64,000 bases of DNA from Botryllus schlosseri (taxonomy: Eukaryota): assembly GCA_051294905.1 (NCBI GenBank), contig CM119373.1:8246001-8310000 (forward strand), given 5' to 3'. The notes beneath the pieces are model-generated. The model was not told where the DNA came from. It made no database searches and saw only the letters and a list, made by a program, of their open reading frames with translations. Shown here one piece after another: positions 901 through 60,557 of the stretch. The position numbers were made by a program, and so were the translations under genes. Every line of letters starts with the position of its first letter. Positions within the stretch are counted from its first letter, which is position 1.

Positions 901-1719
901 TCCACCGTGCATCAGCACCGTACGTCAGTTTCCCAATACTTCCCTGCCCTATAAAGTTGGAAATATCCGATGAACCAGTGGTCACCCCGCTGTGGTCCTT
1001 GAGCAGTTCATTATTATAGGGACTATGTGCATGTGTTGACTGAACACTGTTCAGTTCAGACTGTAAATTCTTTGACCGGTGCACACCTTGGATGCATCAG
1101 AATCCTTCCAAAACGGTTTCCTTGTAATTCCAAATCTGATGAGATTATTCTCAGGTGATGATCAATATTTGATGTTGATATGATTTGATGGATGGAATCT
1201 ATCGTAAATTTGATCGCGAACAAAATTGCTAGCTTCTTATATTCAGGAAGCATGTTTTTTTTAGTATAAACCTCAATTACCTTACCACCAGCAACTGCAT
1301 CACACAACTAAAATAGCGCTGCGCCCAATATACTTTCACTATAGAGACTGTAGGATGGAGCGACGACTCATTGTTCTAAGTTTAGATCCGTCACGCTTGA
1401 CTTTGCGTAGTGAAATTCCGTTCGCGAAAGTCCGATTGTCCTATTTTACATGTAAAAGTATAGGCGATTTCGGAAATGCATGGATGAATTTGAGTGCCGA
1501 AAAAGGGTGGAAATATTCTAGCTAGACGTTTCAAACTTTGCATGTTACGAGGAAGCATCAATATGTTCTCACTAAAAAAAATTCACAACTGTCCTCCACC
1601 CAGAACACGTTTAAAATCAATTTCCCGCAATGCCTTATTCAGTGATAAGCTCTCCGCGGCCGAATCCCATAAACTCGTAGACAATGCTATAATTGATAAG
1701 GCTTTATGCGGTAATAATT

Positions 1720-1960
1720 GAGTGGCCGTTGAAAGCCGCTGATACCGATACAAAACTGCCTAAACTATTTTCCGTGCATAAGCAACCGATGAAAAAAAAC
1801 GAATAGCCTACACGGAAAGCGGATGAAAAAAGAGCGACGAAAAGATTATCAATACATCCAAAAGATCAATATCGTACACTGTTTCATCGGGCATTAGGCC
1901 TCAAAACCAGAAAGCAACTCAAAGTGGGAGCTCTGCCTAAGCTAAATTTGCCTGAAAGAT
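1720..1960 (+). pseudogene. Degraded THAP domain inside TATAGAG copy 1
   Basis: ...KLFSVHKQP...HPKDQYRTLFHRALGLKTRKQLKVGALPKLNLPE resembles the THAP C-terminal end (AVP-type motif); frameshifts and stops. Confidence 0.5.
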
Positions 1961-2084
1961 GTAGCACAATCATAAAGGTATGCGGGGTATCTCTCACCAG
2001 GGATATCTGTCTCTCGCTCAGATCAAGAAACCAATGCACCAAGCGATTCCAATTGATATATTTATTCATATAGAAAGAAAATAA

Positions 2085-2485
2085 GATACCTTTCTCAAGA
2101 AAAGAGTTGCCAGAGACAGTGAGGCACAAAAATATTCCAGATTTGGTACAATCAGCTTCTAATTTGAACAGCAAAATTTGGGGTATAGCAGGCCTGATGG
2201 TTTGATATCACAAGTATAGATTCAACGGCTAGATATTGCTTCTTCATTCAAGGTAACTGGGCATTCTATGAACTGAAAGGTAGACAGCACATTGAGAAGC
2301 ATGGTATGGAAGATGACACAGTGCCAATAATCAGGTTAAGTTAATGTTAATTTCATTACATTGATTGAATTGTCCCTACAGACGTCACAACTTATTCCAC
2401 TCCACTCATCCAATCCTTCAAAGCATTGGGAAATTTCCTCTTCGGTGATGGATTCCCAATCCTCCCACAATGATTCTTCGGCCAT
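2085..2485 (-). pseudogene. Unknown 'WED-FEGLD-CxxC' zinc-finger gene, copy 1 (degraded)
   Basis: ATG at about 2485: MAEESLWEDWESITEEEISQCFEGLDEWSGISCDVCRD; homologous to 56950-57990 and 59750-60132. Confidence 0.65.
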
Positions 2486-3799
2486 AACTTTTACGAAAAA
2501 GTATTGATTATAAAGGAATCAAAATTTCTGTGAAAGCATAATACTCAGAATTTTATTTCCGTTTTGCTGATTAAATAACAATTACCATACATGAGGATAG
2601 CTCGCTACTTATATAGTATCACAGCAATGTCCTCCAATAGTACGGTAAGTGACTTATATTTTCTCGTCGGCAAGTTAAAATACATACAGATTCTGCTGAA
2701 TGACGCCTTCCAGAAGGACCATGACTTGGTATACCCACTTCGCCTGCAACGAAATGCCGTTTCATTTTCAACGCCTGCCCTTTTATTGTTATCTTCTATC
2801 ATCACATAATACGCCACTATAATAGCTATTATATCATAAATCATCGCTGGTATTCACCGACCGTGCGCATTGCGCAGCGATATACCGGCATATTCATCGC
2901 TTCGTACAGCAACAAACGCAAGACCGTCACGCAAGTATCCAAGATATTCACTAATCAGGCCAAACATATTAGGACGTCCAATTAGTCACAGAGTCCGTTA
3001 TATGTATTCAACCTCCAATACTCCGACCCATTCCCATCGACAACCATGCATTAAACCAACAAAAACTCAACTTTCCACCGTCTGAATTCTATGTGGGATT
3101 AATAGTGGTACACGTAACAATGGGTAGCTCCCTACGCAAAGCGGAGCGTGACCAATCTAAAGGGAGTTGAAAATATTATTGCGCGCAGTGTAAATAGAGT
3201 AGTTCAACTTATATAGATATTTCGGTATATCAATGCACTAATACCAGTATAATATAAAATATTTATAGTATTATGGGCAATAATACCATAAATATCCATT
3301 TTACAAGATAATTGCTGCAAAACCATGCAAACAAAATATGTTGCGGATGAATATTAATTAGGCGTTTAAATCAGTCGTCACTCCATCCTACAGTCTCTAT
3401 ACTTTCACCCTCGTCACAAGGGTATGTTTGTTTACCAGTACTTCCTGCTTCAAGTCAGTGTTGCCAACTCCGGATGGAAGAAACCGCTAAAACATGCTAC
3501 TGTAGGACACTATGGTGAAATTGTCAATAGTATATGGTCTCCAATGAAAGAAGATGAAGTGAATTGTTGTGAATTTAATCGTTACTCATACTTAGCCACA
3601 TTGCACGTTCTTTAAAAATCTGGATTACGTATGCAAGGTAGGTAGGCATATGTGACATATTAATGAGCACGCTTGAAAATAAACTAATTTCCTGTTTAGT
3701 TGATTCAGCCTATGGATTTAGTCACGCATCAACGTTCAAAAATCAGGTTTTTATAAATTCTAAACAACCTTTCGCGGGCCGCACTTTGCCCAGGCCTGC

Positions 3800-11296: not shown

Positions 11297-14200
11297 TTAG
11301 CATTTTGCAGAAGCCTTCGAAGTCAGTTTGCGAATCTTGCGAAAGTTTTTCTTCGGTGCCTCTTCAAGCATCGGTTTGGCATTCAAACGCTTGAGGTGAT
11401 TTTTTGCAAAACAATTGAAAGCACTTTGCACATTAAGGTTGAAGTTCAAATGGCTAGATTTACATTTGACATGCATGAGGTAACGAAAACAAGATGTAGA
11501 AGACACAACATAACGCATTGCATTCAGAAAAACATTGCGCTGATTCATACAGCACATCAACTTTTTTAACGTGACTTCATCTGCTGAAACAGCTGAGAAA
11601 TACTGCACAGCCAATAATGTAATGGCAAAGCAAATTTCAGTTGGTTCAGCAAGTCCTCCACGATCTGCCATGTCAAAAATCGTTTTATATCTCTCAGGAA
11701 TGCAGCCATTAATATCTGGAACATTATTAATACCGGATATGAGCACGCCTCTGCAGTCGTCACAACGCCTACGGCGGAAAATTGAGCGACCAATATATCC
11801 ACTAACAAAGACTACAACAGATGCATCAGTATCGTCCACATCATTTGTGACGACAGTTTTCATGAAGTCAGCAAGCCACTGGAAATCTTCGTGGTTTGCT
11901 GATGCATCTTCCTCGCCCGGTTCACAACTGATGATTGCTCTGGACAGTCCATCCCGCTGCAGCAGGCTTAGACACCAAATTTTTTTTCCGCCAGCAGCAA
12001 TTACTTCACAGACATGAAGAAATTACCGCCATTGCTCTGCCGATACATCCCAACGATTGGGTCGGACATTATTTAAGGGGGCACTTCTCTTTAGAAATAA
12101 TTTTTTTGTGTTTTTTTTTTCTTCATCGATCTAGAACGGAAATTTCACGCTCTTTCCAAATATGTCATTATTTTTATGATATTCCAACTCCTTCTTATCC
12201 AAAACTAGTTTCTTTTAGGGACCATTTTATAAAAAAAAGAATTACAGCCCAATTTTTGCTGCAGTCGTGTTCATTATAATCCAACATTCGCCTTTGCTGG
12301 GGGAAATAGCGCCATCTGGTGAAATCTATGCTGTAGAGCTCGAAATGAGTGTTCTAGTATAGTTCTAGCCAGTCTGCCTTCATAAACTTGGCTGCTTCCC
12401 AGATTCAGTAAGCAGGCGAGTTGAGGCTGTTTTTTTCATTTCTTTTTTGATTTGTTGACTGATAACTGACAATATTGGGTGGTATTTATTGTTTGCTTAC
12501 AAATAAGTGTTCTAGCATGTCTGCTTTCATATACTTGGCTGCTTCATTGATTCAGTACCAAGGAAATGGTCCAGATGGGGGTTGTGTGTTGTCCTATTTC
12601 ATCTTTTTTTATTCATTGACTGCTGACTGACAATATTGGGTAGTATGTATTGTTTTTTGATAACTGTTTTGGATTGGTTTTCATTTCTAGCTATCAATAT
12701 GCCTAGAATGAGTCGATCAAGGAAATTTAGAGTTTTAGAAGAATCTTTGAAATGGAAAGATGCATTGGTGGATTCACCAAAACCCAAAATGAGTCATTCG
12801 TTGCGACCATAGGGCCAAGGTGCCTGAAGAAAAGGTACTTATGAACTATGGCAGTAAAACGTGCTGTAGCTATGTCCGTACTGAACTGGAATATTGGATG
12901 CAGTGTATACTTGAGTGTTCTTGAAAGCCTAAACTTGCCAGTGAACACGTTCACAAAAATGGAACTGGTTTGAAGCGAAAAAAAAGACAGACTGCATCTC
13001 GACGCTCTCTCGCTGTGAAAAATTTAAAGAGTTCAAGAGTCCTTAGACACATCAGACTATGTGCCTGGCGGCTATTAATGCTCAGGTGGTGTTATATATG
13101 GTTCAATGTGTGATGCAAATCAACTAATGTGGCCATTGATGTCATGATCAGTGTTCATATCCTTGTTTTTCGAAGTTATTGTAGTTTTAATTTTTTAAAC
13201 GCGTTTTTCTCAAAATATACTTTTTCTGCACAAAAATTGTATCTGCTCGGCACCTGCTTGTCCGATTCATCTGAAATTTTGCACAAATGATGGTTAGGGT
13301 ACGTATAATAAAATAATGGAGCGTTTTCTCAAAATTTTGTCCAGAAAAATTTTTACAGGGGAAAGAATCTTGAAAAAAATAAAAATTTAGGGTTCGCTGA
13401 CAAAAATTTAATAAATTTTGTTAGAAAACCTTTTTTTGAAAATCCCTCCATTATTTTGTAGGTATATACCTGTACTATTACTTCAACAATATTTGAAGGA
13501 AAATCTTGACAGACTTTTGAGTTTTTAGGATTTTTAATACGCGTGTTCAATATTTTCATGTTTTTTTGAGTAAGTGTACCGATGGGGTACATGCTCATGG
13601 TACAACATAAAGACCATATTTGGAAAGGAAATTTCCTGCCCTTTCCAGCAATGTATGAATCATTGGGCTCGCATCTACCTTTGGGAATTTATGACTACAA
13701 ACGTGAACACCTAAAAAAATCACTTTTAAAGAGAAGTGCCCCCTTAAATATTCCACATTCTGAGTTACTTGCAGATGCTCCGTCAACGACAGCACAGCCC
13801 CCATTGTCTGAATACAGGTCATGAATGTTTCATTGCTGAGACCAGCACAGCCCGACTTTTGCCAATTCTTGAAAATGTCGATGGCTCTTCTCAAATAGTT
13901 AACACCGGGATGATCCTCACCAATTTGCAGTGGCGTGAAAAATGAATTTCTTTTCCGCACGGCTGAAATGAATATTTTGTCGCATCAGATAAAGTCAAAT
14001 TGCAGCAAGAAACCTATGTAATGAAAGTTTTACCTTTACTTGGGCTTTTACCAGACATGATATTCCAAATGGTTTGGATGAATTCAACATATTTTGCAGT
14101 TTGCAGAAATTCTGGATGTCCTTTCTCTGCGAAGTGCTTTAGTCCCACTACTGTTGAATCACTAAACACACCTGAAGAAAAGGGCAGCAATCAGGTCATG

Positions 14201-16029
14201 ATCTTTACCAAGGATTGTTCAAAGTCGAGACGGCGAGCTAACATTGACATATGATACTTACTCAAAGCGTGCTGAGGTGAAGTTCGGACGATGCTGCTGG
14301 GATTAAGGGAAACTTTTTTGAGTTGATGTGCAACTTTCAATGTCTTGCCTTCTTCCAGAGCATTGAGGGTTTTGATATGAAGGAACTTTGCATGGCATGA
14401 CACTCCCAGTATATCCTCATTGTCTTTAGTAGGGGGGTGCATCTGCTTCTTATTCACAAAATGGTTGAAGATGTTTTTGAAGTTGTGAGTGAAATCGAAA
14501 ATCAAAAATAATTTTTCTCGGGGTCGATATGGATGTTCGATGCTATGACGAAGTTCTCCATTACAGAGATCCATGAATAATTTCCTAAAAATAAGTATTA
14601 AATGCCTGTTTAACAACTTCAAAAACCAACAAGGATATAAAAACTCACCGGTTACGGACATGGTTGTCTGTTGATATTGCTACCACCCGTAGTATATCGT
14701 TGATCTTTTCCATCACTTCATCAAACCATGTTCGCAGCGTCTCAGTGTCAAGTTTGTCAACCGGAATGAGACAAACCACATCCTTGTACTTCCCAAAAAG
14801 TGATTGCACCATGAATGTTAACACCGTCTTAGCGGGATTGCCACTTTCCGCTATCCCGATGAAAGAACCATTTGTATATTCCACGCGCTGTGCGGTATAA
14901 ACCTCGTCTATCATTAAGGTTACAATTTTTTCTCGGTCGGATAAAGATTTAGTGCTTTCCTTCAAATACGTCATATCAAGTTTGCCTGGCGACACTGTCA
15001 TATCTTCACATAATCTGCGAAGGTGGCGTACTGAAGGCAAAGCAAAAATGTTCAGAAGCTGTGTATAGAGAGCTGGACTTGTAAATTTCCACATGAATGC
15101 AGTGGTTAGAAGATCTGTCGAGTATCTCCGGGAATTGCGGGTCACTTGACAGAGTGACAATTGCTCAATAATAAATGTGATCAACATTGGGTTGAAATCT
15201 GCACAGTTAGTAGATGACATCTGCACAGTCAGGTACTCCTCCAATAGAGATACAGTCAATTCTATGTGGTTGAAATTACTATCGCCGCTGGACAACGACT
15301 TGCATCTGGCAAGAATGTTGTTCAATTCAGATGTCTTCTGAACGTAATTTGCACTCAATAAATCGTCATAATTGGAAGGCGGAACAGGGGCGCCTTTAAT
15401 GAATGCACGAATCTTCATGTCCTTCGATACTATCACAGAAGCTGTGAGTATGGGCGTCTGATGAATATCATTTGACGAAGTTATAAGGTGGAACTGCAAT
15501 GTTTCATCATCAGTAGAATAGACATACCCAGCAGGGAGACGCTCTTTCTGAAACTTTTCTTTCAAAGAGAGTAGGTCAACCACACATTCTTGCTGAATAA
15601 ACTCCTCATTGCATTTTTCTCTGCGGGAATTCTCGGTGGAAAGGCGAGCAGAGGAGGAGCAGTTCTTACTTCGAGGTCTCGGATTGGGGCTTGTTAGATA
15701 ATTTGGCAAAGTTGAAAAAATATGAGGCACAGCAGTAGATTTGAGCCGTTGTCTCGATAATGCTACACAACCACGATGTTTCAAGCGCCGAGACTTCTTG
15801 TCACTTGAAGTATATTCGAAATCGTCATCCGAAAAGTGTAAACGGCAAACTTTTTGTTCAGATGAAGCAACTAGAGCTTTTCTTGGGATTGTTTTAATCC
15901 TTTTTTGCGCATGATAGGATCAGATGGAAAGCTATAGCATGAAACAACAGTGCTGTTGCTGCTTTCCGATTCATCTTTTGTCTTTTTATATCCAGATCTG
16001 CATCCCGGAACACAACATTTATAGCCCAT
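11297..16029 (-). pseudogene. P-element (THAP9-like) transposase, four spliced exons, disrupted
   Basis: THAP MGYKCCVPGC...CRLHF...AVPHIF (1-bp deletion near 15901), LMIDEVY, ISTDNH, FDFTHNFKN, C-terminal GYIG...CDDC...DRGGLAEP; GT-AG introns near 14650-14585, 14260-14172 and 14030-13965; Kolobok insertion; catalytic Glu codon deleted. Confidence 0.9.
12077..13743 (+). mobile_element. Kolobok-type internal-deletion derivative inside the P transposase
   Basis: TTAA on both sides (12073-76, 13744-47); TIR GGGGGCACTTCTCTTTA; remnant near 12740-13078 reads CIGGFTKTQNESFVATIGPRC...AVAMSVLNWNIG...DYVPGGY*, like a Kolobok transposase C-terminus. Confidence 0.88.
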
Positions 16030-47129: not shown

Positions 47130-47681
47130 ATCTTAGAAACAACTGATGTATGAGAGTATATGCTAGGCTTTTTCATGTACAAGCGAGAATACGATATATA
47201 CAATCTGCGAATATGGTCTAAGCAGCCCAGATGTAATTCCATGTTTAAAATTCCGATAAGTGTTTGCGAGTCCAATCACTCTTTCAACATGAATCCGTTA
47301 AGTCGAAATTCTCCTATCACAACTTCCTTCCCCTGTTTCGAGTTGACTTTTGCCACGTAATGGGGCCGGGGTGTTTATACCAACATTGTATGGTGGAAAC
47401 AGATCCTGCACCATAACACCACTGTCAGCCATTATACTGTCACCTGCCTGAAACATGGTGGAAACTGCTTCACGTGGTGCTATCCCTATCATAACCTTCA
47501 CAGTAATCAGGTTTTTATAATTTAAAAATGTCTGACTTTGTAAATTAATATCTGTTGCCTTGCCGGTAGGAATTTCAGTAGCATCGACAATCACCCTTGT
47601 GGTCGGAAAAACTTTCCCAAAGTCCCTTGGCGTAGTCTCGTCAACAATCTTGCGGCTTGGCCATATTAGCCACTGTCTCAT
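47130..47681 (-). pseudogene. DDE region of the ISL2EU-2 transposase (internal deletion, frameshifts)
   Basis: RQWLIWPSRK, TRVIVDATEIP, MIGIAP, DSIMADSG; joins 58272 across TSD GTCTCAT to give TWILSMHSRMRQWLIWPSR. Confidence 0.85.
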
Positions 47682-49388
47682 TATAGAGTATGACTGGAGT
47701 GACGACTCGATTGTTCTCCCATTGTTAGCCGGCAGAATGGTCACGGTCAGATGGCTGCACCCAAAATAGGATCGCTCAGTGCTAGTTTCAATGGCGTTCA
47801 AGGCGATTCGTCGTGTATTTCTTGAAGTTGCGTCGGATTTAGTTAGACAGTTCAACATTTAGGTAGCGGTGGCGAGTCGTTATGACTAGTGAACAATACC
47901 GTGTAGCCTATGTTACATTTCTCACGAGATGGATGTGATATTGTTGCTTTGATCCTTTATAGAGTTTGCTACGTATATGAATAAAATGACAGAAGGTATA
48001 GAATATCTGGTTCGTGTGCATTGGCTATTGTGAGATGAATTCATGGAAAGGAAGACTGAAGAATGCTACAAAGTGAACAAGAGGAAAGATCTTGACCTAT
48101 ATCGATATGCAATTCACAATATCGTTGATTGAAAATATGTCCTATATCAACTGCAGAAACTCGAGTATGAATATAACAAATAATTTGTTGCAACTGTCTT
48201 GTAGTCTTATATAATGCCTGTCCGATAACCGCAGAAACTTGAGTATGACTAGAACAAGAGCCTAGTGTAATGTTAGTGTTCTGCTTGAGCTCGACTCACA
48301 GTAGCCAGAGCTTATACTCCTTGGAAGTGTGCAGAATCGCACTTGAAGGGAACTCGTTGTCATTGCCAAGAATACAGGAAGACGTCCGCCGGTCGACATT
48401 AGTAGTAAGCCAATGCACCACGTCAAGGTTTCGGCCAACTCATTGGTTTCCTTTTTTTAGGTAGGGAACCTCAATGTGGATAGGCAGCATTTGCCACAGA
48501 GCGAAAAAATTACCATGCTAACACTACCAGAAACTACATTAGCTTCATTTGCTGCATCTTTTCTTGGTCATGGGTTCCTGGCATACTTTCGTCTAAAGAT
48601 TTTGATCATCATAGGCATAGTTGTATTGGCACCTTTCCCTCCATTTATAGCCTTACGCTGGCATAAGGCATTTACTGAGTAACTGACTTGGCTAATATCT
48701 GGATTCCTGCTGTATCTCATCAAAGACCGCTATTAAAAAGGCAATCGTTAATTCAGGTTAACATTCGTGTCCTTGTTGACAACGTGATCAGTTCTGCACA
48801 AGAACTGGTACAACTCGTCGGCGAGTTGGATTGGAGTATTCGCTGCGAGTATGACTGACTTCGTAGTATTAATAACTGACTGCCAAGTCCAGACACAATA
48901 GATCCCCGATGTGTGTATTACAGAATGGCGTACGATGAATCCAGACTATAGCATAACGTTAAAAATTACGTTGGCAAATACTCTAAAATATGAGATCACA
49001 ATAATGACAGTTAGAATCAAGAACAACAAAGGACCATGTTTACAATGCGGCGACTATGGAAAGACTGAGCATGTGCTACTACACATGCCCTCATGCGGCG
49101 AGGCGGTCATGTGTGACGTTATCATAGATACAGTCTGAAAACCAACTTGACATAGCCGCCCCCGTGGCGAAACATAATTGCAAAAGGCAGTTATCGTTGA
49201 GACACAGGAATAAATGAAGGAATGGAGGTTTTCAGATTATGAAGACAATCGGGGAGTGAAGAATTATACAAACCAGAAACAATGTACAGAAAGCTAATAT
49301 AGCATCAGCAAGCGAAGGCAATGTACAGAATGTGCATCATGAGTAAATGCGATGCAAATTGGCAAGAAGAAAGCATGCAATATGAAAA

Positions 49389-52300
49389 TTATTCCAGTTC
49401 AAGACGACACAATTTGCGGATGTCGCGGCTATAAGTACCAATGGGCGTACGTACGGTAACTTTACGCACCAATCCGTGCTGATCAGGGAAAACCTCCTCA
49501 ACAATAGCCTTGGGCCACTTGCCGCGGGGCGCATTTGAGTCGGACATGAGAACTACATCTCCTACTTTGAAGTTAGGTGTTTGGTCAAGCCACTTGGAGC
49601 GAGATTGCAACAACGGTAGGTACTCTTTTAACCACCTTTCCCAAAAGAGATCGAGTTTGCGCTGGACACAACGCCAATTTTTGGAGTAGTCATCTGCTTT
49701 ACAGAATTTGTGAGTTGGGACAGAGGGGTCAAGCCTTCCGAGAATTATTGAATTGGGAGTCAGACACGGTAAATCGCCTGTGTCATCGGACAGTGGCGTC
49801 AATGGCCTATCGTTTAAAATACGAGCGACTCCATAAAACAGTGCAGATAATGTGTTATCGTGAAATATTGCATTGTGATTCAGAGCATAAAGAACACGTT
49901 TGCACAAGGCTATACCACTCGCTCGACGCAGCCATTGAAGTGCGGGGCGAGACTGGGTGAAAAGTGCCATTGGATGCCTCTGTCGGCTAGGGACGAGGCC
50001 ACTTGCTTTGAGTTTAGATTACCGACAGCCTTCGCAAGTTCTTTTTGCGCACCAACAAAGGTTGTAGCGTTGTCGCTGAAAATGTGGGCTGGCCTGCCCC
50101 GGATGTCACAGAATTTGAAAAATGCCATCAGAAAGGCTGATGTTTCTAGGGATTCGACCACTTCTAAGTGGACAGCACGAGTACATAGGCAGGTGAATAC
50201 GCAGCCGTAGCGCTTGAGCTCGGTGCGATTGCGTCTGCAGGACAACGGACCAAAATAATCAACCATTGTGTAATTGAAAACATTTTTGTGTGGCGTGAGG
50301 CGGTAATGCGGGAGGTCGGCCATGTATTGGGAGCCTAGAGTCGCTTGGCGACATTGACAGAATATACATTTGTTGAGCACTTTGCGAATGGAAGTCTGGC
50401 CTCTCATGATCCAGAATATTTCTCGAATTAGGGACAGAACTTGTAGCGTGCCACAATGGCCATTCGTGACATGGTAGTGACAGATGATCAAGCGAGTGAC
50501 ATGGTGCCCGGAAGGCAATATCATAGGATTCTTTGCATCCTCCGGGAGCTGAGAGCGATTTAGTCGGCCTTTTACACGCATAACCCCATTTGAAACGTAC
50601 GGTATCAATTTAGCCAAAGAATTGGGAACAAGCTTTTTGTTAACGAGAAACTGATCGGTGGCGCGTGCGTTGTCATGAAACGGTTTGGTGGCACCCGGGA
50701 ACGACTCGCTTTGCACGAGCCTAACAATTTCTCTTGTCGCTTCCTCCAGCTCATCGACGGTGAGGAAACCGGTGCGCGGTGCAGGCAGCGGGTCGCCAGA
50801 CGGGCCTTTTGTCTTCTTGCGCAGCACAGAACGTAGTCGTAAGATCCAGGCAGTCGAGCGGACGAGTTTCGTGAAAGAGGAGAAACTGTTCAGGTAGTCG
50901 TTAAGCGATCTCGTTGTAGGTGTTACGTCTATCGAAAACACTGGTTCGATTTTTGTTGCGGAACGGTGAGCTTTGTTGTGTCCAGGCCATGAGTCTTCAG
51001 GCTGGAGCAAGAAGTCGGGCCCCTCGAACCACATTCTTGCGAGCTGCCAACGATGGGGCATTACGCCACGTGAGCCAGTATCTGCTGGATTGTTGGCGGA
51101 GGCAACATGCTGCCATTGCTCGACTCGCGACAGAGCACGAATCTTGAGTAGTCGTTGATGTACAAAAGTGTCGAATCGGGCCGAAGTGCTCCTGATGCTT
51201 TGGAGCACTGAGGTACTGTCGGTCCAGTAGTGAACAGTGTCGATATTGTAGTCAACATCTTTTATAACGTCTCGGGCGAGCTTGATGCAGGTTACGGCAG
51301 CCGTGAGTTCCAGTCTGGGAATGCTGGGAGCATTCTGCGGCACGACCCTGGAGATGCCTCTGACAAATGATATGTGGACGTTGCCGTCAGAGTCCTCGAA
51401 ACGAAAATAGCAACAGGCTGCATAGCCGGATTTACTAGCATCGGCAAAAGCGTGTAGTTGAATGTTCACGGGCGAGAATCCTGGTGGTTTATAACACCTG
51501 GGAAATGAAAGCTTTTCGAGTTCCGGAAGCGAATTGACCCATTTGGTCCACTTCGCACTGAAACTCTCGTCGATCGGTGTGTCCCAATCTAGGTCGAGAC
51601 GAGAAATTTCCTGTAGAAGTGCCCTTGCTGGTAACAGGAACGGGCTCAGGTATCCGAAAGGAGTATAGATCTGAGCGATTTGACTTGCGATGCCTCTGCG
51701 AGTGAAAGGCTTAGGTACGATGTTAGTGCGTGCACGGAGTGTGTCTTCATTCATGTTCCAGATAACACCCAACGTTCGCTCGTTATCTGAATTTGCGAAG
51801 TCGAGATCAACGAGATTGGAAGCGCGGGCTTCTCCGGGAATCCGGGACATAATCGCAGAACTACCGCTGGCAAATTTCGTCAGATTGAATCCGTAATGTG
51901 CGAAAAGCGTTCGCAGTTCTTCGACGATCTTGATAGAGGTCTCGAGATCATCTGATGAATGGAGTATGTCATCGACATACATGTTCCGGAGGATGCAGTC
52001 GAGAGTAGGCTTGGCGGCGTTCGTGCCGTTTTGCAAGACTATCTGTCGTAGGCAGAATTGAGCAACACATGGAGAGGACGTGCTTCCGAATACGTGAGAT
52101 GTCATCTGGTAATCGGTTGCTCTACCATCTAGCTTGCTGTCAGCGAACCAGAGGAATCGCAAGCTATCCGCGTCTTCTGGATAGGTTTGTATTCTTGAGA
52201 ACATCTGAGCGAGGTCTGCAACCCAAGGGTGCCTGCCCATACGGAAACGGCATAGGACCCCGATGAGAGAAGAATTCACGTCAGGGCCACTGAGCAGTTG

Positions 52301-55300
52301 GCTATTTAGACTGGTACCGGAGAATTTGCGGCTTGCGTCGAAGACTATTCGCATCTTTTGTTGCCGGGTGTGAAAATGGACGAGGTAGAACGTTCGCTCA
52401 GAGGAAGGCAGCAATTCTGGCGGAACAACTTGAGCGTACCCTCGAGATAGATACTCGTCGATTTTTTCCTTGTACTTTCGAAAGAACTCGGGATCTTTCG
52501 CGAATTTCAAGCGCTGGGATTCGAGCGATTTCTCAGCGGCTGCTCTGTTGTACGGGAGCTTCACGTCTTTCGTCCGCCACGGAAGGCCTACCTGGAAACG
52601 ACCGTTCAGTATGCGTGCCGTATCTTTCATCAAGGCGAGCGCGCGCTCATCGTCGATCGAATGTTGAGATTCGTAGGGGTCAACCCAAATGTCCGAAAAA
52701 TCAGCGTTACAGCTAGAACACAATGGCAATGTACGCGAATCGAGATGCTTAGAAATGCGTGTATCAACGTGTACGAAATTAATATCGATAAAATTGGCAC
52801 TATTAGGCTCGGCATCGGAGCTCGCCATGGTATAATCTGAGCCCCCAAGACACCAACCAAAGACCGAGAGCTCGGCCCCGGGCAAGCCGTTCTGAGGCTT
52901 GATAACTTCAGTGCTGGGGTAGCGCATTAGGAAATCTTTCCCAATGACCAAGTCGACATCATTTGTGTCGGCAACCGGTATATTAATGTGGCTGAGGTGA
53001 GTGCATTTAGAAATGGTATCAACATTTGGAGAGTGATTGAACACATCAGGAAAGTGGGGAGAGGCAAGCACATCAGGTATATCAATCACCGTGCTCTGAT
53101 CAAGGCCTCGGACGGAAAGAGCCACCACTTCTACCTCCCCCTCGGCGGTGCCCGTAGCTGTCTTGGTTCGACAAGCAATACGATCACCATGTAGATTCAA
53201 TTTTTTGCGCAGGCGCTCTGTGCACAGTATAGAGCCACAGCCTGGATCTAGGAATGCGTTAGAGGTCACTCTAACTTTTGAATCGGGGGAGGTGATTATG
53301 ACCGGTACGACGGCTAAGCGCACAGGATTCACTTTCCCGTTTAGCGAGGATGACATCGTGTTGACGTCAGCGAATATTTTATTTTGGAAACCCCAGTGGA
53401 GTAGGGTGTGATGCGATGAGTTGCAGCCGTCGATGTAGCACTTGCGTTCTGACTTACATGTACGGGGTTCATGCCCGTAATTCAGGCAGGTGGTGCAGAT
53501 CCGTTTTTCTTCCACGCACTTTTTACGCTCATCTGGGGTCTTCTGATGGAAGACGTCGCATTTGTAGATCTGGTGTGTGCCACTGCAGAGATGACAGCGC
53601 GGTGGCGGCGGTCTTTGCGAATTGCTTTGTCGACGTTCACTGGAGGCACCGACGGGGCGCTCAACGGTTGTTGCGTTCACTTTCACTTGCGTGGTGCATC
53701 TTGCGGCTCTGGCGTTCGGCATGTTGGCTACGAGTCTTCCCATGCGAGTTCTCCCGATATCAGCTGCACTCACAACGAAGTCGACGAAGTCGTCAAAGGT
53801 TGGCTCGATGCCGTTTTTCATCGTATCATTGTACTTGTTCGTGAATCTTGTCATAAAGTTTTTGGGGAAGCGCTTTACTATTTTGTCAAAAACGCCTGGC
53901 GCGTTCACTTGCGCCTTTGCTCTAAGTTGTGCAAGGACGTACCTGGCCGTTCTGAGCTCGTCAGATACTTTTTGCAGCGCCCTACTGTCGCTAGGTTCAA
54001 CATGATTATCTTGAGTTAAATTATCAATGAATGCATCAATAACGTAGTTTTCGCGGCCAAATTTATCGTACAGAATTTTGCGGGCATGTGAGTACGCTTC
54101 CTCGTCATGCCGATTAGCACGACAACCAGAAAGTGAAGCCTCCGCATCACCAGTACAAAACGAGATCAATCTATTTAGTTTGGTCCGGGCTGAGTGTCTC
54201 TCACTAGGATGTGCATTTACAGGCTCGAAAGCGGAATCAAATTCATCGATAAAACGGTAGTAATCTCGCGGGCTGCCATCAAAACTTGAGATTGTTATGG
54301 TCTGTAGGTCCATCCCACGTTTCATGGAGCCTAGCATACTGTTCAATGACATGGCACAAGGATCGTTAAGCGAGTTCCCCGAACCGTGCGGTGGAATAGA
54401 AGCGACATAATCCCCATGCGGGCGATAATAACTAGAACCGGTTTGGTCGCGGGAATGAGGACTGTGCCAAGTGTGCTCATATGGCGCGTAATGTCTATCG
54501 GCGCCTGGATCGCGATAGCGAGAGGTGAGATCAGAGTGCCCATGGGGCGCGTAATGACTATAGTCGGCTTGACCGTGGTAATGAGAGGTTGGATAGGTGT
54601 GCGTGTATGGCACGGTATGACTATGGGCGGTTTGCTCGCCATAGCGAGAGGTTGGATCGGTGTGCGCGTACGACACGGTATGACTATCGGCGGTTTCATC
54701 GCGATAACGAGAGTTTGGATCGGCGTGCCCATATGGCGCGTTATGACTATCGGCGGTTCGATCGCGATAACGAGAGGTTGGATCGGCGTGTGCGTACGGC
54801 ACGGTATGACTATCGGCGGTTTGATCGCGATAACAAGAGGTTGGATCGGCGTGTGCGTACGGCACGGTATGACTATCGGCGGTTTGATCGCGATAACAAG
54901 TGGTTGGATCGGCGTGCGCGTATGGCACAGTATGACTATCAGCGGATTGATCACGATAGCGAGAGACGGGATCGTTCTGCCACTGTGGAGTACTTTGCGA
55001 ATACGAGGGAGTTGCTGGCTCCGAGCGCGAATGAACGGGCTGGGAATGTGTGCCTATCTCTCGAGCCTGGCTACCAAGATCATCAGCTGCGAAACTGACG
55101 GACAGACGACTGCTACGGTTAGGGGTTTGTCTTAGATCATGCGCGACTTGAGTACTAGCCAATGCCGTCGACTGATGAGTGTCTGTCAACGATAGGGTTA
55201 CCGCCGGCTCCGTTGCGAGCCTCTGCCCAGCACTACTGGCTGTGGCAGATGCAGGCGTTCCCCAGGTAACGAAACTCGATGTTTGCGTAGTGAGTAAATC

Positions 55301-55963
55301 TAAAGGTTCAGTACTCACAGCACCATTTTCTCCTTCGAGGACAAGTGATCCGACGGAACCGCCGCCGGATTCTTCTTCGGCAATTTCCAAGTTTGAAGTT
55401 AATTCGAGAATCTCCATATTTTCTTCAAGTTCTGCTGCGATGCTAGCTTCTTTGGCTTTTTCTGTAGCTCTTCTTGCTTGTTGTCTGAGTTTTATCTTTT
55501 CGATTGACAGTCTAGCATCGCGTGCTGCGGATGATTTTTTGGAAGATGTGACAGAATGAGGACTCGCAGGTATCTCCGAGGTTCGAGGCTTAATGTAGTC
55601 AAGGGTGACATCGGAAGAAGAGTTTACGTTCTCTTTTCGGTAATCTTGGAAGGCGCGACCAGCCTGACGCTGACCCTGTACGACTGTCAACAACAGTCCT
55701 TGTATCTGCAAGACGCTCTCCTGTAGAGCAGGATTCATTTTAGCTTTTTCGATCAATCCGTAGAAGTCGTCAATGAGTTTACTGCATAGTTCATCTAGTT
55801 CGCAGTTACACTTGATAGCGTTTTCAGTAGACGACGTATTCTGTAAGGCGGAGGAGAAAGCGTCTTTAGCTTTCTCGTAGGCAACTCTGGAACTTTCCAG
55901 GACTGCGTCGATATGCTGCTTGTTCAACTCTTGTTGACCAACGGCTTGTAAGGTTCGATCCAT
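49389..55963 (-). CDS. BEL/Pao Gag-Pol polyprotein (Gag, three Cys/His knuckles, protease, RT, RNase H, integrase); one frameshift near 49915
   Basis: First ATG MDRTLQ; CHLCSGTHQIYKC, CTTCLNYGHEPRTC, CYIDGCNSSHHTLLH; AFLDPGCG; RNMYVDD; LHAFADASKSGY; VDYFGP, SDNATTF; removing 2 nt restores GCVERVIALCKRVL. Confidence 0.95.
54440..54965 (-). repeat. 63-bp coding tandem repeat (21 aa, about 8 copies) in BEL Gag
   Basis: Unit SRYRDQTADSHTVPYAHADPT; GATCGGCGTG recurs at 54781 and 54844. Confidence 0.95.
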
Positions 55964-55982
55964 ATCGAGGTCGGTCAGCACT

Positions 55983-55998
55983 CGTAATTTTTAACTTT
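55983..55998 (-). promoter_or_regulatory. Non-tRNA primer-binding site, complementary to the element's own LTR (56186-56201)
   Basis: Sense strand after the LTR is AAAGTTAAAAATTACG; the LTR sense strand contains CGTAATTTTTAACGTT (15/16 complementary, 13 contiguous). Confidence 0.7.
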
Positions 55999-56949
55999 TG
56001 TCCTTGTTGACAACGTGATCAGTTCTGCACAAGAACTGGTACAACTCGTCGGCGAGTTGGATTGGAGTATTCGCTGCGAGTATGACTGACTTGGTAGTAT
56101 TAATAACTGACTGCCAAGTCCAGACACAATAGATCCCCGATGTGTGTATTACAGAATGGCGTACGATGAATCCAGACTATAGCATAACGTTAAAAATTAC
56201 GTTGGCAAATACTCTAAAATATGAGATCACAATAATGACAGTTAGAATCAAGAACAACAAAGGACCATGTTTACAATGCGGCGACTATGGAAAGACTGAG
56301 CATGTGCTACTACACATGCCCTCATGCGGCGAGGCGGTCATGTGTGACGTTATCATAGATACAGTCTGAAAACCAACTTGACAATTCGTAAATAATATTA
56401 ATGAATGTCAACTGAAGTTACCAAAGATCCAAATGCTGCTTCCATAACACCATTCAAAAGCCGAATTGCTAGCTTGACCAATGATCAATGACCATTTTCT
56501 TGGACCATATTTGTATAGAACTCTGATCTTGGTGGACACTTTTGGCATTCTTGAAATTGGATGTAAATTTCACCGACTTGTTACTAGTGGTAACCAGAGT
56601 GGAACAACATCGTCGGGTGGTTATAATGGTACCTATAACCATGGAAGTATTTCCTGCCAAAAATCTCAACATTTGTAAGAGATATGCTGGAAAATATAAG
56701 AATATTTCAATCTTCTCCGAATTGTTCACCTCTGGCCAGCGGGCCATATCTTTGACACCCCTGCTTTACATTATAGTAAACCCCACAGTGATAGCAGTAG
56801 CAATTGTCAAATTGGTTAAGAAATACCATGGCTTATACAATTCCAACAATAACAAAAAAGCAAAGACTTTCAACAGCATCATGATTGAAACAAGAGGTTT
56901 GGAAGTATAGAAAATGGTGCTATAAGAGCATATTGTTCATTGTTTTTTC

Positions 56950-57990
56950 AAGCTATCTCGCAAACATTTGGAAAATTTGGAAGACTTTTTCTGCTTCTCA
57001 TGCAATGCAAACTTCGCAAAATTGTGAGAACAGATGTTATTCAAGTGGTGTTTCATTGCCTTGTCCATGACATCCTCAACCTCATTTCGGTCTGAACCAG
57101 ATGGAAGTGATACAGTGTGAATCAATTTGTTATAGAATGGATCGCATTGAATTGCCTCAAGTACCCAGAAAAATTTATCTTTTTCATGGGTTTTGCCATT
57201 TCTTTACTGTGGATAACATAAAAGCGGAGAACCATGTCATGAGACTGTTCTCACGCGGGCTCTTCAATCCACCGTCTTTCTTCTGCTCCACTTTAATGAG
57301 GTTTCCCGATGGTGCTGCAGTTGTTAGGCACGTGGCATGCTTCGTTGGCTTGCTTAGAAATGGCTCCCAAAAGCATTCCACCAATATATTCAAGTATGTC
57401 TAAAAACACGTCAAAGTTTTTCCATGGAAAGGCAAAGTATAGGCTATTCACTTACCAGATTCCTTGCTGTTGACTCCTTTAATCTCTGTGATTGGATGCT
57501 GCTCTTTACCGCAGACGAGAGAATCAAAAATTTTCAGAAGTAATGCTGAAGCTGGCAATTGTGGCAAACCCAGAAACTTGTTAGCTTGATGGCAGATATT
57601 AGAATAATGTTGATAAAATCCGTCAACACAAAGTTTACAATATTCAGAATGGAGTTTTTCCACCAATGGAACAGCTTTGGTCAAGTCTAGTTCCTCAATG
57701 ATGGGGTGCATTCAAAGTATTTTTTTTGCTATAAGCCCTCTTCAAAACAGCAATTATACAGCATCCTCAGATATATTCCAATTACTGGTGAGAACTTCAT
57801 GATTTTTGAAACGTTTCTTCAAAGCTTTCACAGTGGGAATTGGGAAAGGATGCTTCGCATTCCTCACAAAACACACCTTTCCAGTTATTAAGTCCTTCGA
57901 AACATTCTTCAATTTCCATTTAGTTAGTCCATCGCAGTCATCCCCAAAGGCCAACGTGATGCGCCCGAATAGGGCATGATACCGACTTCT
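56950..57990 (-). pseudogene. Unknown 'WED-FEGLD-C2H2' gene, copy 2 (most complete; spliced, frameshifted)
   Basis: DDCDGLT.EIEECFEGLNNWKGVFCEECEASFP-TVKALKKRFKNH; LPQLPASALLLKIFDSLV...VNSKESG|gtaagt...ag|DILEYIGGMLL...KKDGGLKSP...KCLRDSLKKQ*. Confidence 0.7.
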
Positions 57991-58271
57991 ATCAGTTCTA
58001 TGCGTGACGAAGTATGATCTAATTATGGCGAAAAATATAACAGAGGCTACACGGTATTATTCGCTAGTCGTAACGATTCACCATCGCTACCTAAATGTTG
58101 AACTGTCTAACTAAATCCGACGCAGCTTCAAGAAATACACGACGAATCGCCTTGAACGCCATTGAAACTAGCACTGAGCGATCCTGTTTTGGGTGCAGCC
58201 ATCTGACCGTGACCATTCTGCCGGCTAACAATGGGAGAACAATCGAGTCGTCACTCCAGTCATACTCTATA

Positions 58272-59051
58272 GTCTCATTCTACTATGCATGGACAGGATC
58301 CAAGCTTGAAATATACTTGATACCGTGGCCATTGATAGTTTATACAGAATACTGATTTCCTCAAAATCTTTGCTCAACGGTCTCAACTTCATCAAGGTCA
58401 AAAACAACTGTTCCTCACCGCTCAAACAGTGAAATTGACTGGCTGTCTCCTCTGCGGCAGACTTCTCAATAACAGAAAATGAGCGTAACCATAATCATCC
58501 AATCCAGTATAATAATACATTGCACGGGCATCTCCTTTGAAGTTTTCAATTGAGAAGTGATTTATAATAGTACCGGTACGCTCTATGGAAACTGCTTGCA
58601 CCTGGCAAGCTCCATCGCATTTACTACTAACGCCAGTGCAATCAAAAAAGTCCCTTGTATCACTGACCGTCTCTTCTCCAGCTCTATTCTGGTGCTGACA
58701 TTCATCCTCGACTGTCAAATCAACATTTAAAATGCTTCTCCGAACCCTTCTCTCTGTTCTAGCAGATAGTAGCTTATTAGCTATGCTAAATTGAAAAATG
58801 GACGGGACGGCATTTTTTTTCAACTTTCCATAACGGCGCTTGCTGACCGATTAAGGTTGCTGCACGTAATCGTCATCCGTAAAATGGCTGCTACAAACGC
58901 GGTCACGGTCCAAGTTAGGTCTCCAAAGACCGCCTTTATCACCCTTTCTCCTGAGAGCTACTGGCCACTTTAACTGTAACTCCATGTCAATGGGAAACAT
59001 GTGACCCGTGGATGTACTATTACATCTTGGGACACAGCAGTAATGGGGCAT
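58272..59051 (-). pseudogene. THAP and N-terminal part of the ISL2EU-2 transposase
   Basis: MPHYCCVPRCNS...FP...LRRK...VCSSHF...LKKNAVPSIF...FSIENF...YYTGL...EEQLFLTLMKLR. Confidence 0.88.
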
Positions 59052-59132
59052 ACCTCCTTTTACAGCTTATCTATATCAGTAAAGACGCGTTACGGGAATA
59101 GTCAAATGCTTCGAGCAAGTTCCATTATAGAG

Positions 59133-59230
59133 CAGAGGTCTCAAACACGCGGGTCGCATGCATTTTGTGCGGCCCGCAACAGCATTTTGGAATTTCAAGT
59201 ATTCGACAATATCCAGTGCCACTGTCTTTT
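59133..59230. mobile_element. hAT/Charlie-type MITE end
   Basis: CAGAGGTCTCAAACACGCGG...GCGGCCCGC; related ends at about 39080-39150, 39440-39510, 56735-56765 and from 60258. Confidence 0.6.
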
Positions 59231-59749
59231 TTAGATATAGGAACTTGAAGTTCACCCTAAAACTACTATAAAGACCTGAAATCTCAACAGACTACACTAT
59301 CACATCACTTTTAACAGCTACCACGCGGTAGAAGATCAGCTATTACGTCACATTTCTAGTTAGTGATGATAAAACATGACCCGTTGATGATTCGTGACTG
59401 AAAATTGTGATTTGGTTTTGTGCGATCTTTCGTAAAATTACTCGATTTCGGATTGGCTGGGTGATTAAATAAAAATGACTCGAGTTGAGTCGCATCAAAC
59501 GTTAAAATCATAGAAGGACTTGCGACTTGGAACGGTGACTTGGCAATCCCACGGATGCCAAAATCTATGAAACTGTCATGGGGAATAGTAATATATCAAA
59601 AGGTCGTACCTGGCGTTGCGTATGGTATAAGTCTACTCAGAAAATGTAGAAGTACGGCCTACCTTGTTACTGACCACCTCAGGAATTATTACGCATCTCG
59701 AGAGCATAAATTAATGAATGCCATCTACTATTTTGCAAATGACAAATCA

Positions 59750-60132
59750 TTACCGGACTCACGCCGATTGAGACCGAAAGCAGAAGTAATAGGCTCCTCC
59801 TCTTTCACATGCACCAACACATCGAAAACCTTTGGTAAAACCATTGCAGCACCCAATTGTGGTAAGCTACTCGAATGGTGGAACTGATTTTATCAAGCAG
59901 TTGGCTGACTAACATGCAGTCCTCCGTATGGAGATCCCTCTATGATCATCCATGTTGCTGTCGGGAGTTGGATGATAATGGGTTTTGGCGTGTTTCCAAG
60001 CTCTTTTATTGTGGGAAAGGTGGCAGAACATGCTGCACACGAAGCTCCTCTCCGGTCATCCAAGCCTTCGAATAAGTATATAATTTCTTCCGTCATTCCC
60101 TTGCAATCCTCCCATATCATTTCTTCATCCAT
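59750..60132 (-). pseudogene. Unknown 'WED-FEGLD-C2H2' gene, copy 3 (first coding exon)
   Basis: MDEEMIWEDCKGMTEEIIYLFEGLDDRRGASCAACSATFPTIKELG(K)HAKTH...SLPQLGAAMVLPKVFDVLVHVKEEEPITSAFGLNRRESG|gtaatg; same intron position as copy 2. Confidence 0.7.
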
Positions 60133-60557
60133 ACCAATCAGTCCACCAGACTATAGACATATAAAAGTAACAAAATGACAGCGCAGTACTCACCTACGGG
60201 CTACTTACCGTACACAGTTTTAATTCGCAACTGAACATCGGTCCCTACGTTCTAGAGCTGGGGTGGGCAAACTACGGCCCGCGGGCCGCATGCGGCCCGC
60301 AACACCGTTCTGTGCGGCCCGCGAGAGTCTAAAGAAACTTCTAAAAAATATTGATAAAATTCGTTCTAAAAAATCGAATTAATGCAGGGACTTGATGAAA
60401 CTTTTTCTCAGTATATGTCATCATGATAATTCTAAGGCAGTGGTTCTGAAAGTGGGGTCGCGCCCCCTTGGGGGCGTGAAAGCATTTGAAGGGTGGTGCG
60501 AAGCTGAGCTCAACTGAAAAAATTTTTCGCGCTTGCGTTGATTGCAGAAGATGGTAG

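What the first reader, a model, noticed from the sequence alone, without database searches (positions are those of the whole stretch)
56950..57990. Unrecognised spliced C2H2 zinc-finger gene with a P-transposase-like C-terminus, in three diverged copies
Seen: 2085-2485, 56950-57990 and 59750-60132 share W-E-D-x4-T-x-E-E-I-x2-C-F-E-G-L-D-x-W-x-G followed by CxxC. In copies 2 and 3, fixing one small indel gives a C2H2-type finger (CAACSATFPTIKELGKHAKTH; CEECEASFPTVKALKKRFKNH, first His replaced by Arg). Copies 2 and 3 also share LPQL..A...K(I/V)FD.LV..KE..PIT...G.N..ESG and an intron at the same phase-1 position. The ORF track splits these frames and misses the homology. Exon 2 of copy 2 (ILEYIGG...DGGLKSP...KCLRDSLKK) parallels the C-terminal domain of the P transposase in this window (VSGYIG...RGGLAEP...RKIRKL). 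Inference: a non-catalytic ZnF/P-CTD accessory protein, such as a regulator or targeting factor, maintained under selection across old lineages.
Basis: partly seen in the sequence, partly recalled or inferred. Interest (0 to 1): 0.8.

Follow-up and report, generated by a model that had tools for sequence, protein, structure and literature searches.

The report
Detached tail gene of P transposons
The three "zinc-finger gene" copies are dead remnants of the second gene of a P-type jumping gene whose cutting enzyme has lost its tail domain, and that tail is made instead by this separate, spliced zinc-finger gene, giving a natural system to test what the tail does.

Summary
The shared motif, the finger and the phase-1 intron are real, but all three window copies are broken. 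Copy 2 has 10 frameshifting indels. Copy 1 keeps about 35 codons. Copy 3 is a 570-bp fragment.

They belong to a DNA-transposon family with more than 145 genomic matches. Its ends read TATAGAG, followed by a TGGAGYGACGACT box, and its 7-bp target duplications fit (G/C)TnnnA(C/T), as in the P-superfamily element Galileo.

Intact copies elsewhere in the genome encode a 328-aa, two-exon protein. RNA-seq supports the splice, and no intronless DNA copy exists.

Its C-terminal 155 residues are the P-transposase/THAP9 C-terminal domain (CTD):
- hhalign against a bona fide transposase CTD: 98% probability, E 3e-14.
- Top PDB sequence hit 6P5A chain B, E 3e-5.
- Structural match to 6P5A chain B: Z 9.1, 2.5 Å over 106 residues.
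- ESM Atlas matches to THAP9_C clusters: TM 0.63–0.77.

Transposase-bearing elements carry a THAP–HTH–RNaseH/GBD transposase that stops about 60 residues after the catalytic-E motif and has no CTD. The same pairing recurs in finger-less families here and in two contigs from other assemblies. The gene evolves under purifying selection (ω about 0.2).

Action in trans on the transpososome is inferred. Whether it is essential or regulatory is open.

The parts
47682..58271 (-). Whole transposon that holds copy 2. Ends are TATAGAG...; the 7-bp target duplication GTCTCAT lies at 47675-47681 and 58272-58278. The transposase body is deleted.
   Evidence: Exact 32-nt termini on opposite strands; flanks read; comparison with the transposase-bearing copy L033
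47682..47945 (+). Left terminal inverted repeat (~250 bp), with the TGGAGTGACGACTC box at 47695-47708
58008..58271 (-). Right terminal inverted repeat, with the box at 58245-58258
57456..57990 (-). Copy 2, exon 1 remnant: acidic N-terminal motif, a broken C2H2 finger (7-nt insertion, first His changed to Arg) and the helical middle region. It has several frameshifts and stops.
57400..57455 (-). Copy 2 intron (GTAAGT...TTTTTAG, phase 1)
   Evidence: Sequence. The homologous 59-nt intron of the intact copy L008 is removed in RNA.
56937..57399 (-). Copy 2, exon 2 remnant: the P-transposase/THAP9-type C-terminal domain, with frameshifts
   Evidence: profile hits on the pieces
48756..56383 (-). BEL/Pao LTR retrotransposon nested inside the copy-2 element (395-bp LTRs at 48758-49152 and 55991-56383). 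It is not part of the gene.
1340..3401 (-). Copy 1 element: a 2.06-kb internal-deletion derivative of the second subfamily, with 7-bp duplication CTTTCAC. It keeps the THAP 5' part of the transposase on the + strand (~1900-2073) and the first ~35 codons of the zinc-finger gene (2378-2485, minus strand).
59630..60199 (-). Copy 3: a fragment of a third subfamily (L040 type). It holds only exon 1 (about 59750-60132), has one frameshift in the finger, and has no ends nearby.

Best explanation
SHOWN. The copies are remnants of 'ORF2' of a bipartite P-superfamily DNA transposon. Transposase-bearing elements are about 5.5-6.3 kb. Their ends read TATAGAG and carry a conserved TGGAGYGACGACT box 10-13 nt inside. 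They make 7-bp target duplications.

They carry two genes. The first is a THAP-HTH-RNaseH/GTP-binding-insertion transposase that ends about 60 residues after the catalytic-E motif (TQDVLEA.FG) and has no C-terminal domain. The second is a separate two-exon gene for a 328-aa protein. That protein has an acidic N-terminal motif, one C2H2 finger, a helical middle part, and a 155-residue all-helical domain that is the P-transposase/THAP9 C-terminal domain (CTD).

INFERRED. The P-type transposase is split here into two polypeptides. The ORF2 protein joins the transpososome in trans, in the place where the cis CTD sits in the Drosophila complex. [quoted passage not shown] Its basic C-terminal helix would point at the target. 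The finger would add sequence-specific DNA binding, perhaps to the subterminal box. Transposition output would then depend on two genes being expressed together.

Most genomic copies of the main subfamily (more than 100) are deletion derivatives that keep ORF2, often intact, but have lost the transposase.
For: Element. TSDs at six fully bounded copies, and a target consensus (G/C)TnnnA(C/T) from 24 ends. This resembles Galileo's GTANTAC 7-bp TSD in the P superfamily (PMC4168063).

Transposase. Pfam finds THAP, Tnp_P_element HTH, TNP-like RNaseH_N and GBD on the ORF blocks. The same short C-terminal tail is conserved in two subfamilies whose transposase regions are only ~65% identical in DNA. 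The 3' ends of the two genes lie ~185 bp apart, which leaves no room for a CTD.

ORF2 equals the CTD.
- A profile without any transposase rows gives 6P5A chain B (P transposase CTD) as the top PDB hit, E 3.2e-5 (E 0.016 with 7 rows).
- hhalign against the CTD of an 870-aa bona fide P transposase: 98.2%, E 3.4e-14.
- Search of 1.84 billion proteins: that transposase's fragment P0080 matched in its CTD region, E 1.5e-4.
- AF2 model pLDDT 92.6.
- VIA-align to 6p5a_B: Z 9.1, rmsd 2.5 Å over 106 residues, next best Z 5.8.
- Top Swiss-Prot model: THAP9 residues 715-853.
- ESM Atlas top five rows are all THAP9_C/P-transposase clusters, TM 0.63-0.77.
- tblastn of the canonical transposase on L027: core on one strand, CTD on the other, inside ORF2.

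Recurrence. At least 17 transposase loci in this genome have an ORF2-type CTD hit nearby, mostly within 1.5-3 kb and facing the transposase (coordinates). Contigs from other assemblies show the same pairing (L037, L038).

Gene reality. The spliced junction is seen in raw RNA-seq (8 reads from 5 start points) and in a contig with an exact 59-nt skip, CT..AC. There is no intronless genomic copy. ω is about 0.19.

Plausibility of trans action. In Drosophila the CTD hangs on a disordered linker and packs against the other subunit (PMC7776569). The 66-kDa product that lacks the C-terminal third is inactive and repressive.
Against: No binding or activity data exist. The one complex prediction gave no verdict.

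A 2026 preprint reports that Drosophila and human transposases without the CTD still excise and integrate (10.64898/2026.08.31.747927). The trans CTD may therefore be dispensable or regulatory.

The transposase gene models are read from ORF blocks, not from cDNA.

Only two transposase-bearing copies of the main subfamily were found, and both have a damaged ORF2. No single intact two-gene copy of that subfamily was seen.

The zinc-finger protein itself gets no Pfam CTD hit. The N-terminal half has no recognisable fold beyond the finger.
Confidence: 0.6

Rival explanations
1. ORF2 is a dispensable regulator of transposition, an inhibitor or integration brake, and not a subunit that the CTD-less transposase needs. 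The transposase would work alone, and ORF2 protein would tune or repress it.
For: Truncated Drosophila and human enzymes lacking the CTD still excise and integrate, and removing the THAP9 CTD raises integration (preprint 10.64898/2026.08.31.747927). ORF2-only elements vastly outnumber transposase-bearing ones, as expected if surplus ORF2 is tolerated or selected as a brake.
Against: The classic 66-kDa product lacking the C-terminal third is inactive (PMC7776569). A pure inhibitor carried by the element itself in every diverged lineage needs a special argument. Nothing here separates the two readings.
Confidence: 0.25
2. ORF2 is a functionless by-product of an old inversion or rearrangement of the 3' part of a P transposase gene, carried along passively.
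For: Gene order differs between subfamilies, tandem in L033/L039 and convergent in L031/L024, so rearrangements do occur.
Against: Purifying selection on both halves. A conserved intron position, and splicing seen in RNA. A gained N-terminal region and finger. Retention in several families only 25-50% identical and in contigs from other assemblies.
Confidence: 0.05
3. It is a host (domesticated) zinc-finger regulator gene family kept by selection, as the first reader leaned towards.
For: Open frames in many copies. Selection signal between subfamilies.
Against: Every copy examined lies inside inverted ends with a 7-bp duplication. There are more than 145 matches, copies are 96-98% identical with random decay, and the three window copies are broken. 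No annotated orthologue turned up in 5.8 billion clustered proteins.
Confidence: 0.03

Closest known systems
C-terminal domain of Drosophila P element transposase (PDB 6P5A/6PE2) and of human THAP9 (Pfam PF22824 THAP9_C, PF12596)
   Same: Same all-helical fold (Z 9.1, 2.5 Å over 106 residues; TM up to 0.77). Same sequence motifs: LEYIxGY, GxLxxPS, and a basic C-terminal helix with KxLRxxLK.
   Different: Here the domain is a separate gene product fused to an acidic motif, a C2H2 finger and a helical region. It is not the tail of the transposase polypeptide. The neighbouring transposase lacks it.
P superfamily transposons: P element, 1360, Galileo
   Same: THAP-HTH-RNaseH/GBD transposase; 7-bp TSD with a GTnnnAC-like palindromic target, as in Galileo; long inverted ends in the main subfamily; abundant internal-deletion derivatives.
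   Different: Two genes instead of one. The transposase is naturally truncated where the Drosophila 66-kDa repressor is roughly truncated. The ends read TATAGAG and carry a conserved internal 14-nt box.
Two-gene DNA transposons: PIF/Harbinger (transposase plus Myb-like protein), MuDR, CACTA (named from general knowledge, not tested here)
   Same: An element-encoded second, non-catalytic DNA-binding protein that accompanies the transposase.
   Different: There is no sequence relationship. Here the second protein is demonstrably a detached domain of the transposase family itself.
P element 66-kDa and KP repressors
   Same: Element-encoded, non-catalytic products of the P system. They show that presence or absence of the C-terminal third changes activity.
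   Different: Those keep the THAP DNA-binding N-terminus and lack the CTD. ORF2 is the reverse: it has the CTD and no THAP domain.

Membership tests
P superfamily DNA transposon (the element) | [quoted passage not shown] | tested here: met
   Pfam THAP 4e-9 type hits, PF12017 E 1.5e-3, PF21787 E 5.6e-6, PF21788 E 6e-4 on the ORF blocks of L031. Several are below the gathering score because the blocks are exon pieces. tblastn with an 870-aa P transposase also matches.
P superfamily DNA transposon (the element) | 7-8 bp target-site duplication and terminal inverted repeats | tested here: met
   Matching 7-bp duplications: GTTTTAG, GTTAAAC, GTTCCAC, GTCTCAT, CTTTCAC, ATACCAC, CTGTTAC. Inverted ends.
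P superfamily DNA transposon (the element) | Single transposase polypeptide that includes the C-terminal domain | tested here: not met
   The transposase ends ~60 aa after the E motif in two subfamilies, and 46 aa after RNaseH_C in L038. The CTD lies in a separate gene.
THAP9_C / P transposase C-terminal domain (PF22824, PF12596) | Pfam model match at the gathering score | tested here: not met
   No hit for the zinc-finger protein's exon 2. Finger-less relatives score 19.4 and 15 bits against a cut-off of 22.6. A finger-bearing relative from another assembly (P0100) has a precomputed PF22824 hit.
THAP9_C / P transposase C-terminal domain (PF22824, PF12596) | Profile-level sequence homology to CTDs of bona fide transposases | tested here: met
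   hhalign 98.2%, E 3.4e-14 against P0102. 6p5a_B E 3.2e-5 with a profile free of transposase rows.
THAP9_C / P transposase C-terminal domain (PF22824, PF12596) | Same three-dimensional fold | tested here: met
   Z 9.1, rmsd 2.5 Å over 106 of 118 residues of 6p5a_B. THAP9 715-853 is the top Swiss-Prot model. Atlas TM 0.63-0.77 to THAP9_C clusters. Plain Foldseek against PDB was weak, E 0.35, though it ranked first.
C2H2 zinc finger | CX2-4CX12HX3-5H with a beta-beta-alpha fold | tested here: met
   CEECEASFPTVKALKKHYKNH in intact copies, conserved in the 51%-identical subfamily. The model shows two short strands and a helix. Pfam scores are just below cut-off, 23 against 25 bits. In the three window copies the finger is broken.
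P element repressors (66 kDa, KP) | [quoted passage not shown] | tested here: not met
   No THAP domain in ORF2.
PIF/Harbinger second protein | Myb/SANT-like protein paired with a DDE_Tnp_4 transposase | tested here: not met
   No Myb/SANT hit. The DDE_Tnp_4 gene beside copy 2 belongs to a different element that the copy-2 element inserted into.

The most novel reading that the evidence does not exclude
A natural two-polypeptide P-type transposase. The catalytic core cannot complete normal transposition without the separately encoded finger-plus-CTD subunit, so mobility is gated by co-expression of two genes. The very abundant ORF2-only deletion derivatives would act as dispersed donors, or as sponges, of that subunit. 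This would also show that the CTD of P/THAP9 enzymes is an autonomous module that can work in trans.
Probability: 0.3. Interest if true: 0.75.

Novelty: new variant of a known kind. Interest (0 to 1): 0.6.

Why it matters
The role of the C-terminal domain of P transposase and human THAP9 is an open question. The classic 66-kDa repressor work and a 2026 truncation study point in different directions.

A family in which evolution has already cut the domain off and placed it on its own gene gives a direct experiment: transposase with and without ORF2, on its own ends.

It also adds a two-gene architecture to the P superfamily. It explains a high-copy 'unassigned' repeat of this genome. And it shows that stand-alone THAP9_C proteins in animal assemblies can be transposon genes, not fragments. 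I found no description of such elements in four literature searches. The 2026 CTD study says the fold is found only in THAP9 homologs, and term searches of it for stand-alone forms found none.

Tried and rejected
- Direct BLASTP and hhalign of exon 2 against this window's own P-transposase C-terminal ORF were not significant.
- Pfam on the window pieces and on intact exon 2 gave nothing useful.
- Word-based protein searches found only four unnamed Logan proteins. Cluster look-up gave no names.
- Plain Foldseek against PDB was weak on its own.
- The N-terminal half was tested three ways: structure search against Swiss-Prot models and against PDB, and a profile comparison with the transposase linker region. 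None gave a match.
- The feature search of the ESM Atlas gave no usable hit.
- Complex prediction used a natural pair from another assembly, a 212-aa transposase fragment plus the CTD of P0100. It gave no verdict, 0.11 against a mark of 0.34, with poorly folded chains. This is no evidence either way.
- NG86 and YN00 dS could not be computed because of saturation.
- A host-gene reading and a Harbinger-ORF2 reading were both considered and dropped (see membership tests).
- My first idea was that the BEL/Pao element had inserted exactly at the deletion junction of the short elements. This was wrong: the window element is a derivative of the transposase-bearing form.

Full report
**What is in the window.**
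On the minus strand, 2336-2485, 57797-57954 and 59893-60132 all carry the acidic W-E-D..T.EEI..CFEGLD.W.G motif followed by CxxC. Copies 2 and 3 continue into LPQL...KIFD...PIT...ESG and then GT at the same codon phase.

None of the three is a working gene.
- Copy 2, aligned to an intact genomic copy (L008), is 88.5% identical. It has 12 indels inside the coding sequence, 10 of them frameshifting, and stops in the N-terminal motif.
- Copy 1 stops being homologous right after CDVC. Only ~35 codons are left.
- Copy 3 is a 570-bp piece of a third subfamily with exon 1 only.

**They are transposon copies.**
The copy-2 exon-1 ORF finds 145 places in the 495-Mb genome and the exon-2 domain finds 151. 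Many of these have open frames.

Comparing copies defines the main-subfamily element at about 4 kb, with ~250-bp inverted ends starting TATAGAG and a 7-bp target duplication.

In the window, copy 2 lies in an element spanning 47682-58271, with duplication GTCTCAT.
- This element holds a nested BEL/Pao retrotransposon at 48756-56383.
- It has lost its transposase body.
- It inserted into a THAP+HTH_Tnp_4+DDE_Tnp_4 gene of another transposon.

Copy 1 lies in a 2.06-kb deletion derivative, 1340-3401, with duplication CTTTCAC.

The two subfamilies share only the terminal TATAGAG and the TGGAGYGACGACT box.

Twenty-four ends give the target pattern (G/C)TnnnA(C/T). This is close to the 7-bp GTANTAC of Galileo, a P-superfamily element (PMC4168063). 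I re-derived them independently.

**The intact gene.**
In L008 the gene has a 511-nt exon 1, a 59-nt GTAAGT..TTTTTAG intron in phase 1, and a 476-nt exon 2. It encodes 328 aa. The finger is a canonical CX2CX12HX3H.

About 8 of 20 sampled copies are intact or nearly so, at 96-98% identity. That is what a young family decaying neutrally after insertion would show.

Support for the splice:
- Raw RNA-seq reads cover both exons, dip over the intron, and include a joint seen in 8 reads from 5 start points.
- A Logan contig of a run guessed (not recorded) to be RNA carries an exact 59-nt skip with CT..AC on the plus strand, which is GT..AG on the gene strand.
- No genomic copy has the joined sequence.

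Between the main subfamily and the copy-1 subfamily (51% protein identity, same intron position) dN is 0.37-0.41 and dS is saturated. LWL85 gives ω 0.19, and the three codon positions differ by 0.38/0.26/0.61. That is purifying selection on both halves.

**What the protein is.**
Pfam sees only the finger, and that below threshold.

Weaker genomic matches of exon 2 (25-28% identity) are the C-terminal halves of single-exon ORFs of about 300 aa. These lack a finger but share the N-terminal motif and are collinear throughout.

A profile of these proteins was searched against 1.84 billion representatives. It found 87 proteins, all 405 aa or shorter and none with an informative name. Two kinds of hit matter.
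- Some are finger-plus-CTD proteins from other samples.
- One, P0080, is a fragment of an 870-aa bona fide P transposase (P0102), matched in its C-terminal region.

Evidence that exon 2 is the P/THAP9 CTD:
- A 35-row profile with no transposase sequences hits the Drosophila P transposase CTD chain 6P5A_B as the top PDB sequence, E 3.2e-5.
- The same profile aligns to the P0102 CTD at 98.2% probability, E 3.4e-14.
- The AlphaFold model of exon 2 (pLDDT 92.6, seven helices) superposes on 6p5a_B with Z 9.1 and 2.5 Å over 106 residues. The next entry is at Z 5.8.
- Its best Swiss-Prot model match is THAP9 715-853.
- Its five best ESM Atlas rows are all THAP9_C or P-transposase clusters, TM 0.63-0.77.

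The exon-1 half models as a ββα finger plus helices (pLDDT 72.7) and has no fold match.

**The companion transposase has no CTD.**
In the copy-1 subfamily (L031, L024, L036) the zinc-finger gene converges on a THAP-HTH-RNaseH/GBD transposase on the other strand.

That transposase runs ...TQDVLEATFGSLV, then an intron, then about 60 more residues ending in a basic KRKRKAK tail. Its stop lies ~185 bp from the stop of the zinc-finger gene.

The main subfamily's two transposase-bearing copies (L033, L039) have the same short tail, although their transposase regions are only ~65% identical in DNA to L031. The short end is therefore conserved and is not a product of decay.

A CTD profile hits only ORF2 in all these loci.

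A canonical P transposase laid on L027 matches the core on one strand and its residues 707-798 on the opposite strand, inside ORF2.

Comparing the coordinates gives at least 17 transposase/ORF2 pairs. Most lie 1.5-3 kb apart and are convergent.

Two contigs from other assemblies show the same layout. In L038 the finger-CTD protein P0100 (precomputed PF22824 hit) faces a transposase that ends 46 residues after RNaseH_C. L037 is similar.

**How it most likely works.**
In the Drosophila strand-transfer complex the CTD hangs on a disordered linker. [quoted passage not shown] A domain placed like that can plausibly be supplied as a separate chain.

The 66-kDa product lacking the C-terminal third is an inactive repressor. 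That suggests the CTD-less core here needs ORF2.

Against that, a 2026 preprint reports that CTD-deleted Drosophila and human enzymes still excise and integrate, and that deletion raises THAP9 integration. ORF2 could therefore be a modulator.

I commit to 'detached CTD acting in trans on the transpososome' at 0.6. Whether it is essential or regulatory is left open. The finger's target is unknown. The conserved subterminal box is a candidate.

The one complex prediction gave no verdict.

**Novelty.**
Four literature searches found no P-type element with a second gene or a stand-alone CTD. The 2026 CTD study describes the fold as present only in THAP9 homologs. Term searches of that paper for 'standalone' and 'stand-alone' found nothing.

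This is a new architectural variant of a known superfamily. The window copies themselves are ordinary dead repeats.

Noticed in passing
window 58267-59051 (-) and 47298-47681 (-): A THAP + HTH_Tnp_4 + DDE_Tnp_4 (PIF/Harbinger-like) transposase gene is split in two by the insertion of the copy-2 element. The HTH lies right of the element and the DDE domain starts left of it.
   Followed up: partly
window 55951-59211 = G000:C3:8301951-8305211; also G000:C3:6484070-6487330 (L001) and G000:C203:10200-13460 (L003): The decayed copy 2 occurs with all the same indels at two further places. This points to a segmental duplication about 1.8 Mb away on the same contig plus an unplaced contig, or to assembly redundancy.
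   Followed up: no
L033 (G000:C9:6574000-6583999) and L039 (G000:C3:8034000-8043999) versus L031/L024: Gene order differs between subfamilies. In the main subfamily the transposase follows the zinc-finger gene on the same strand. In the copy-1 subfamily and the finger-less families the two genes converge. The only two transposase-bearing main-subfamily copies have a damaged zinc-finger gene.
   Followed up: partly
window 5655-6953 (+) and 7576-8730 (-): A SWIM + YqaJ exonuclease ORF lies next to a DDE_Tnp_4/HTH_Tnp_4 transposase ORF. This may be the two-gene transposon type noted elsewhere in this genome (s1-249669).
   Followed up: no
L028 1653-3125 (+): A 490-aa ORF with a Cys-rich KCRDNC motif lies upstream of a finger-less ORF2/P-transposase pair. 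It probably belongs to another, unidentified transposon.
   Followed up: no
L021 4929-5135 (+) and 5156-5455 (-): An inverted duplicate of ~200-300 bp sits inside the short main-subfamily element. It looks like a hairpin or a MITE-like insertion. Copies differ in this region.
   Followed up: no
ESM Atlas clusters (rows 1 and 5): Clusters of ~220-aa arthropod proteins carry only THAP9_C. They could be further stand-alone CTD genes or just fragments of transposase models.
   Followed up: no
window 11297-15784 (-): A canonical-looking P-type transposase (PF21787 hit) has a same-strand C-terminal ORF bearing VSGYIG...GGLAEP motifs. Its CTD is too diverged to match the ORF2 profile significantly.
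   Followed up: partly
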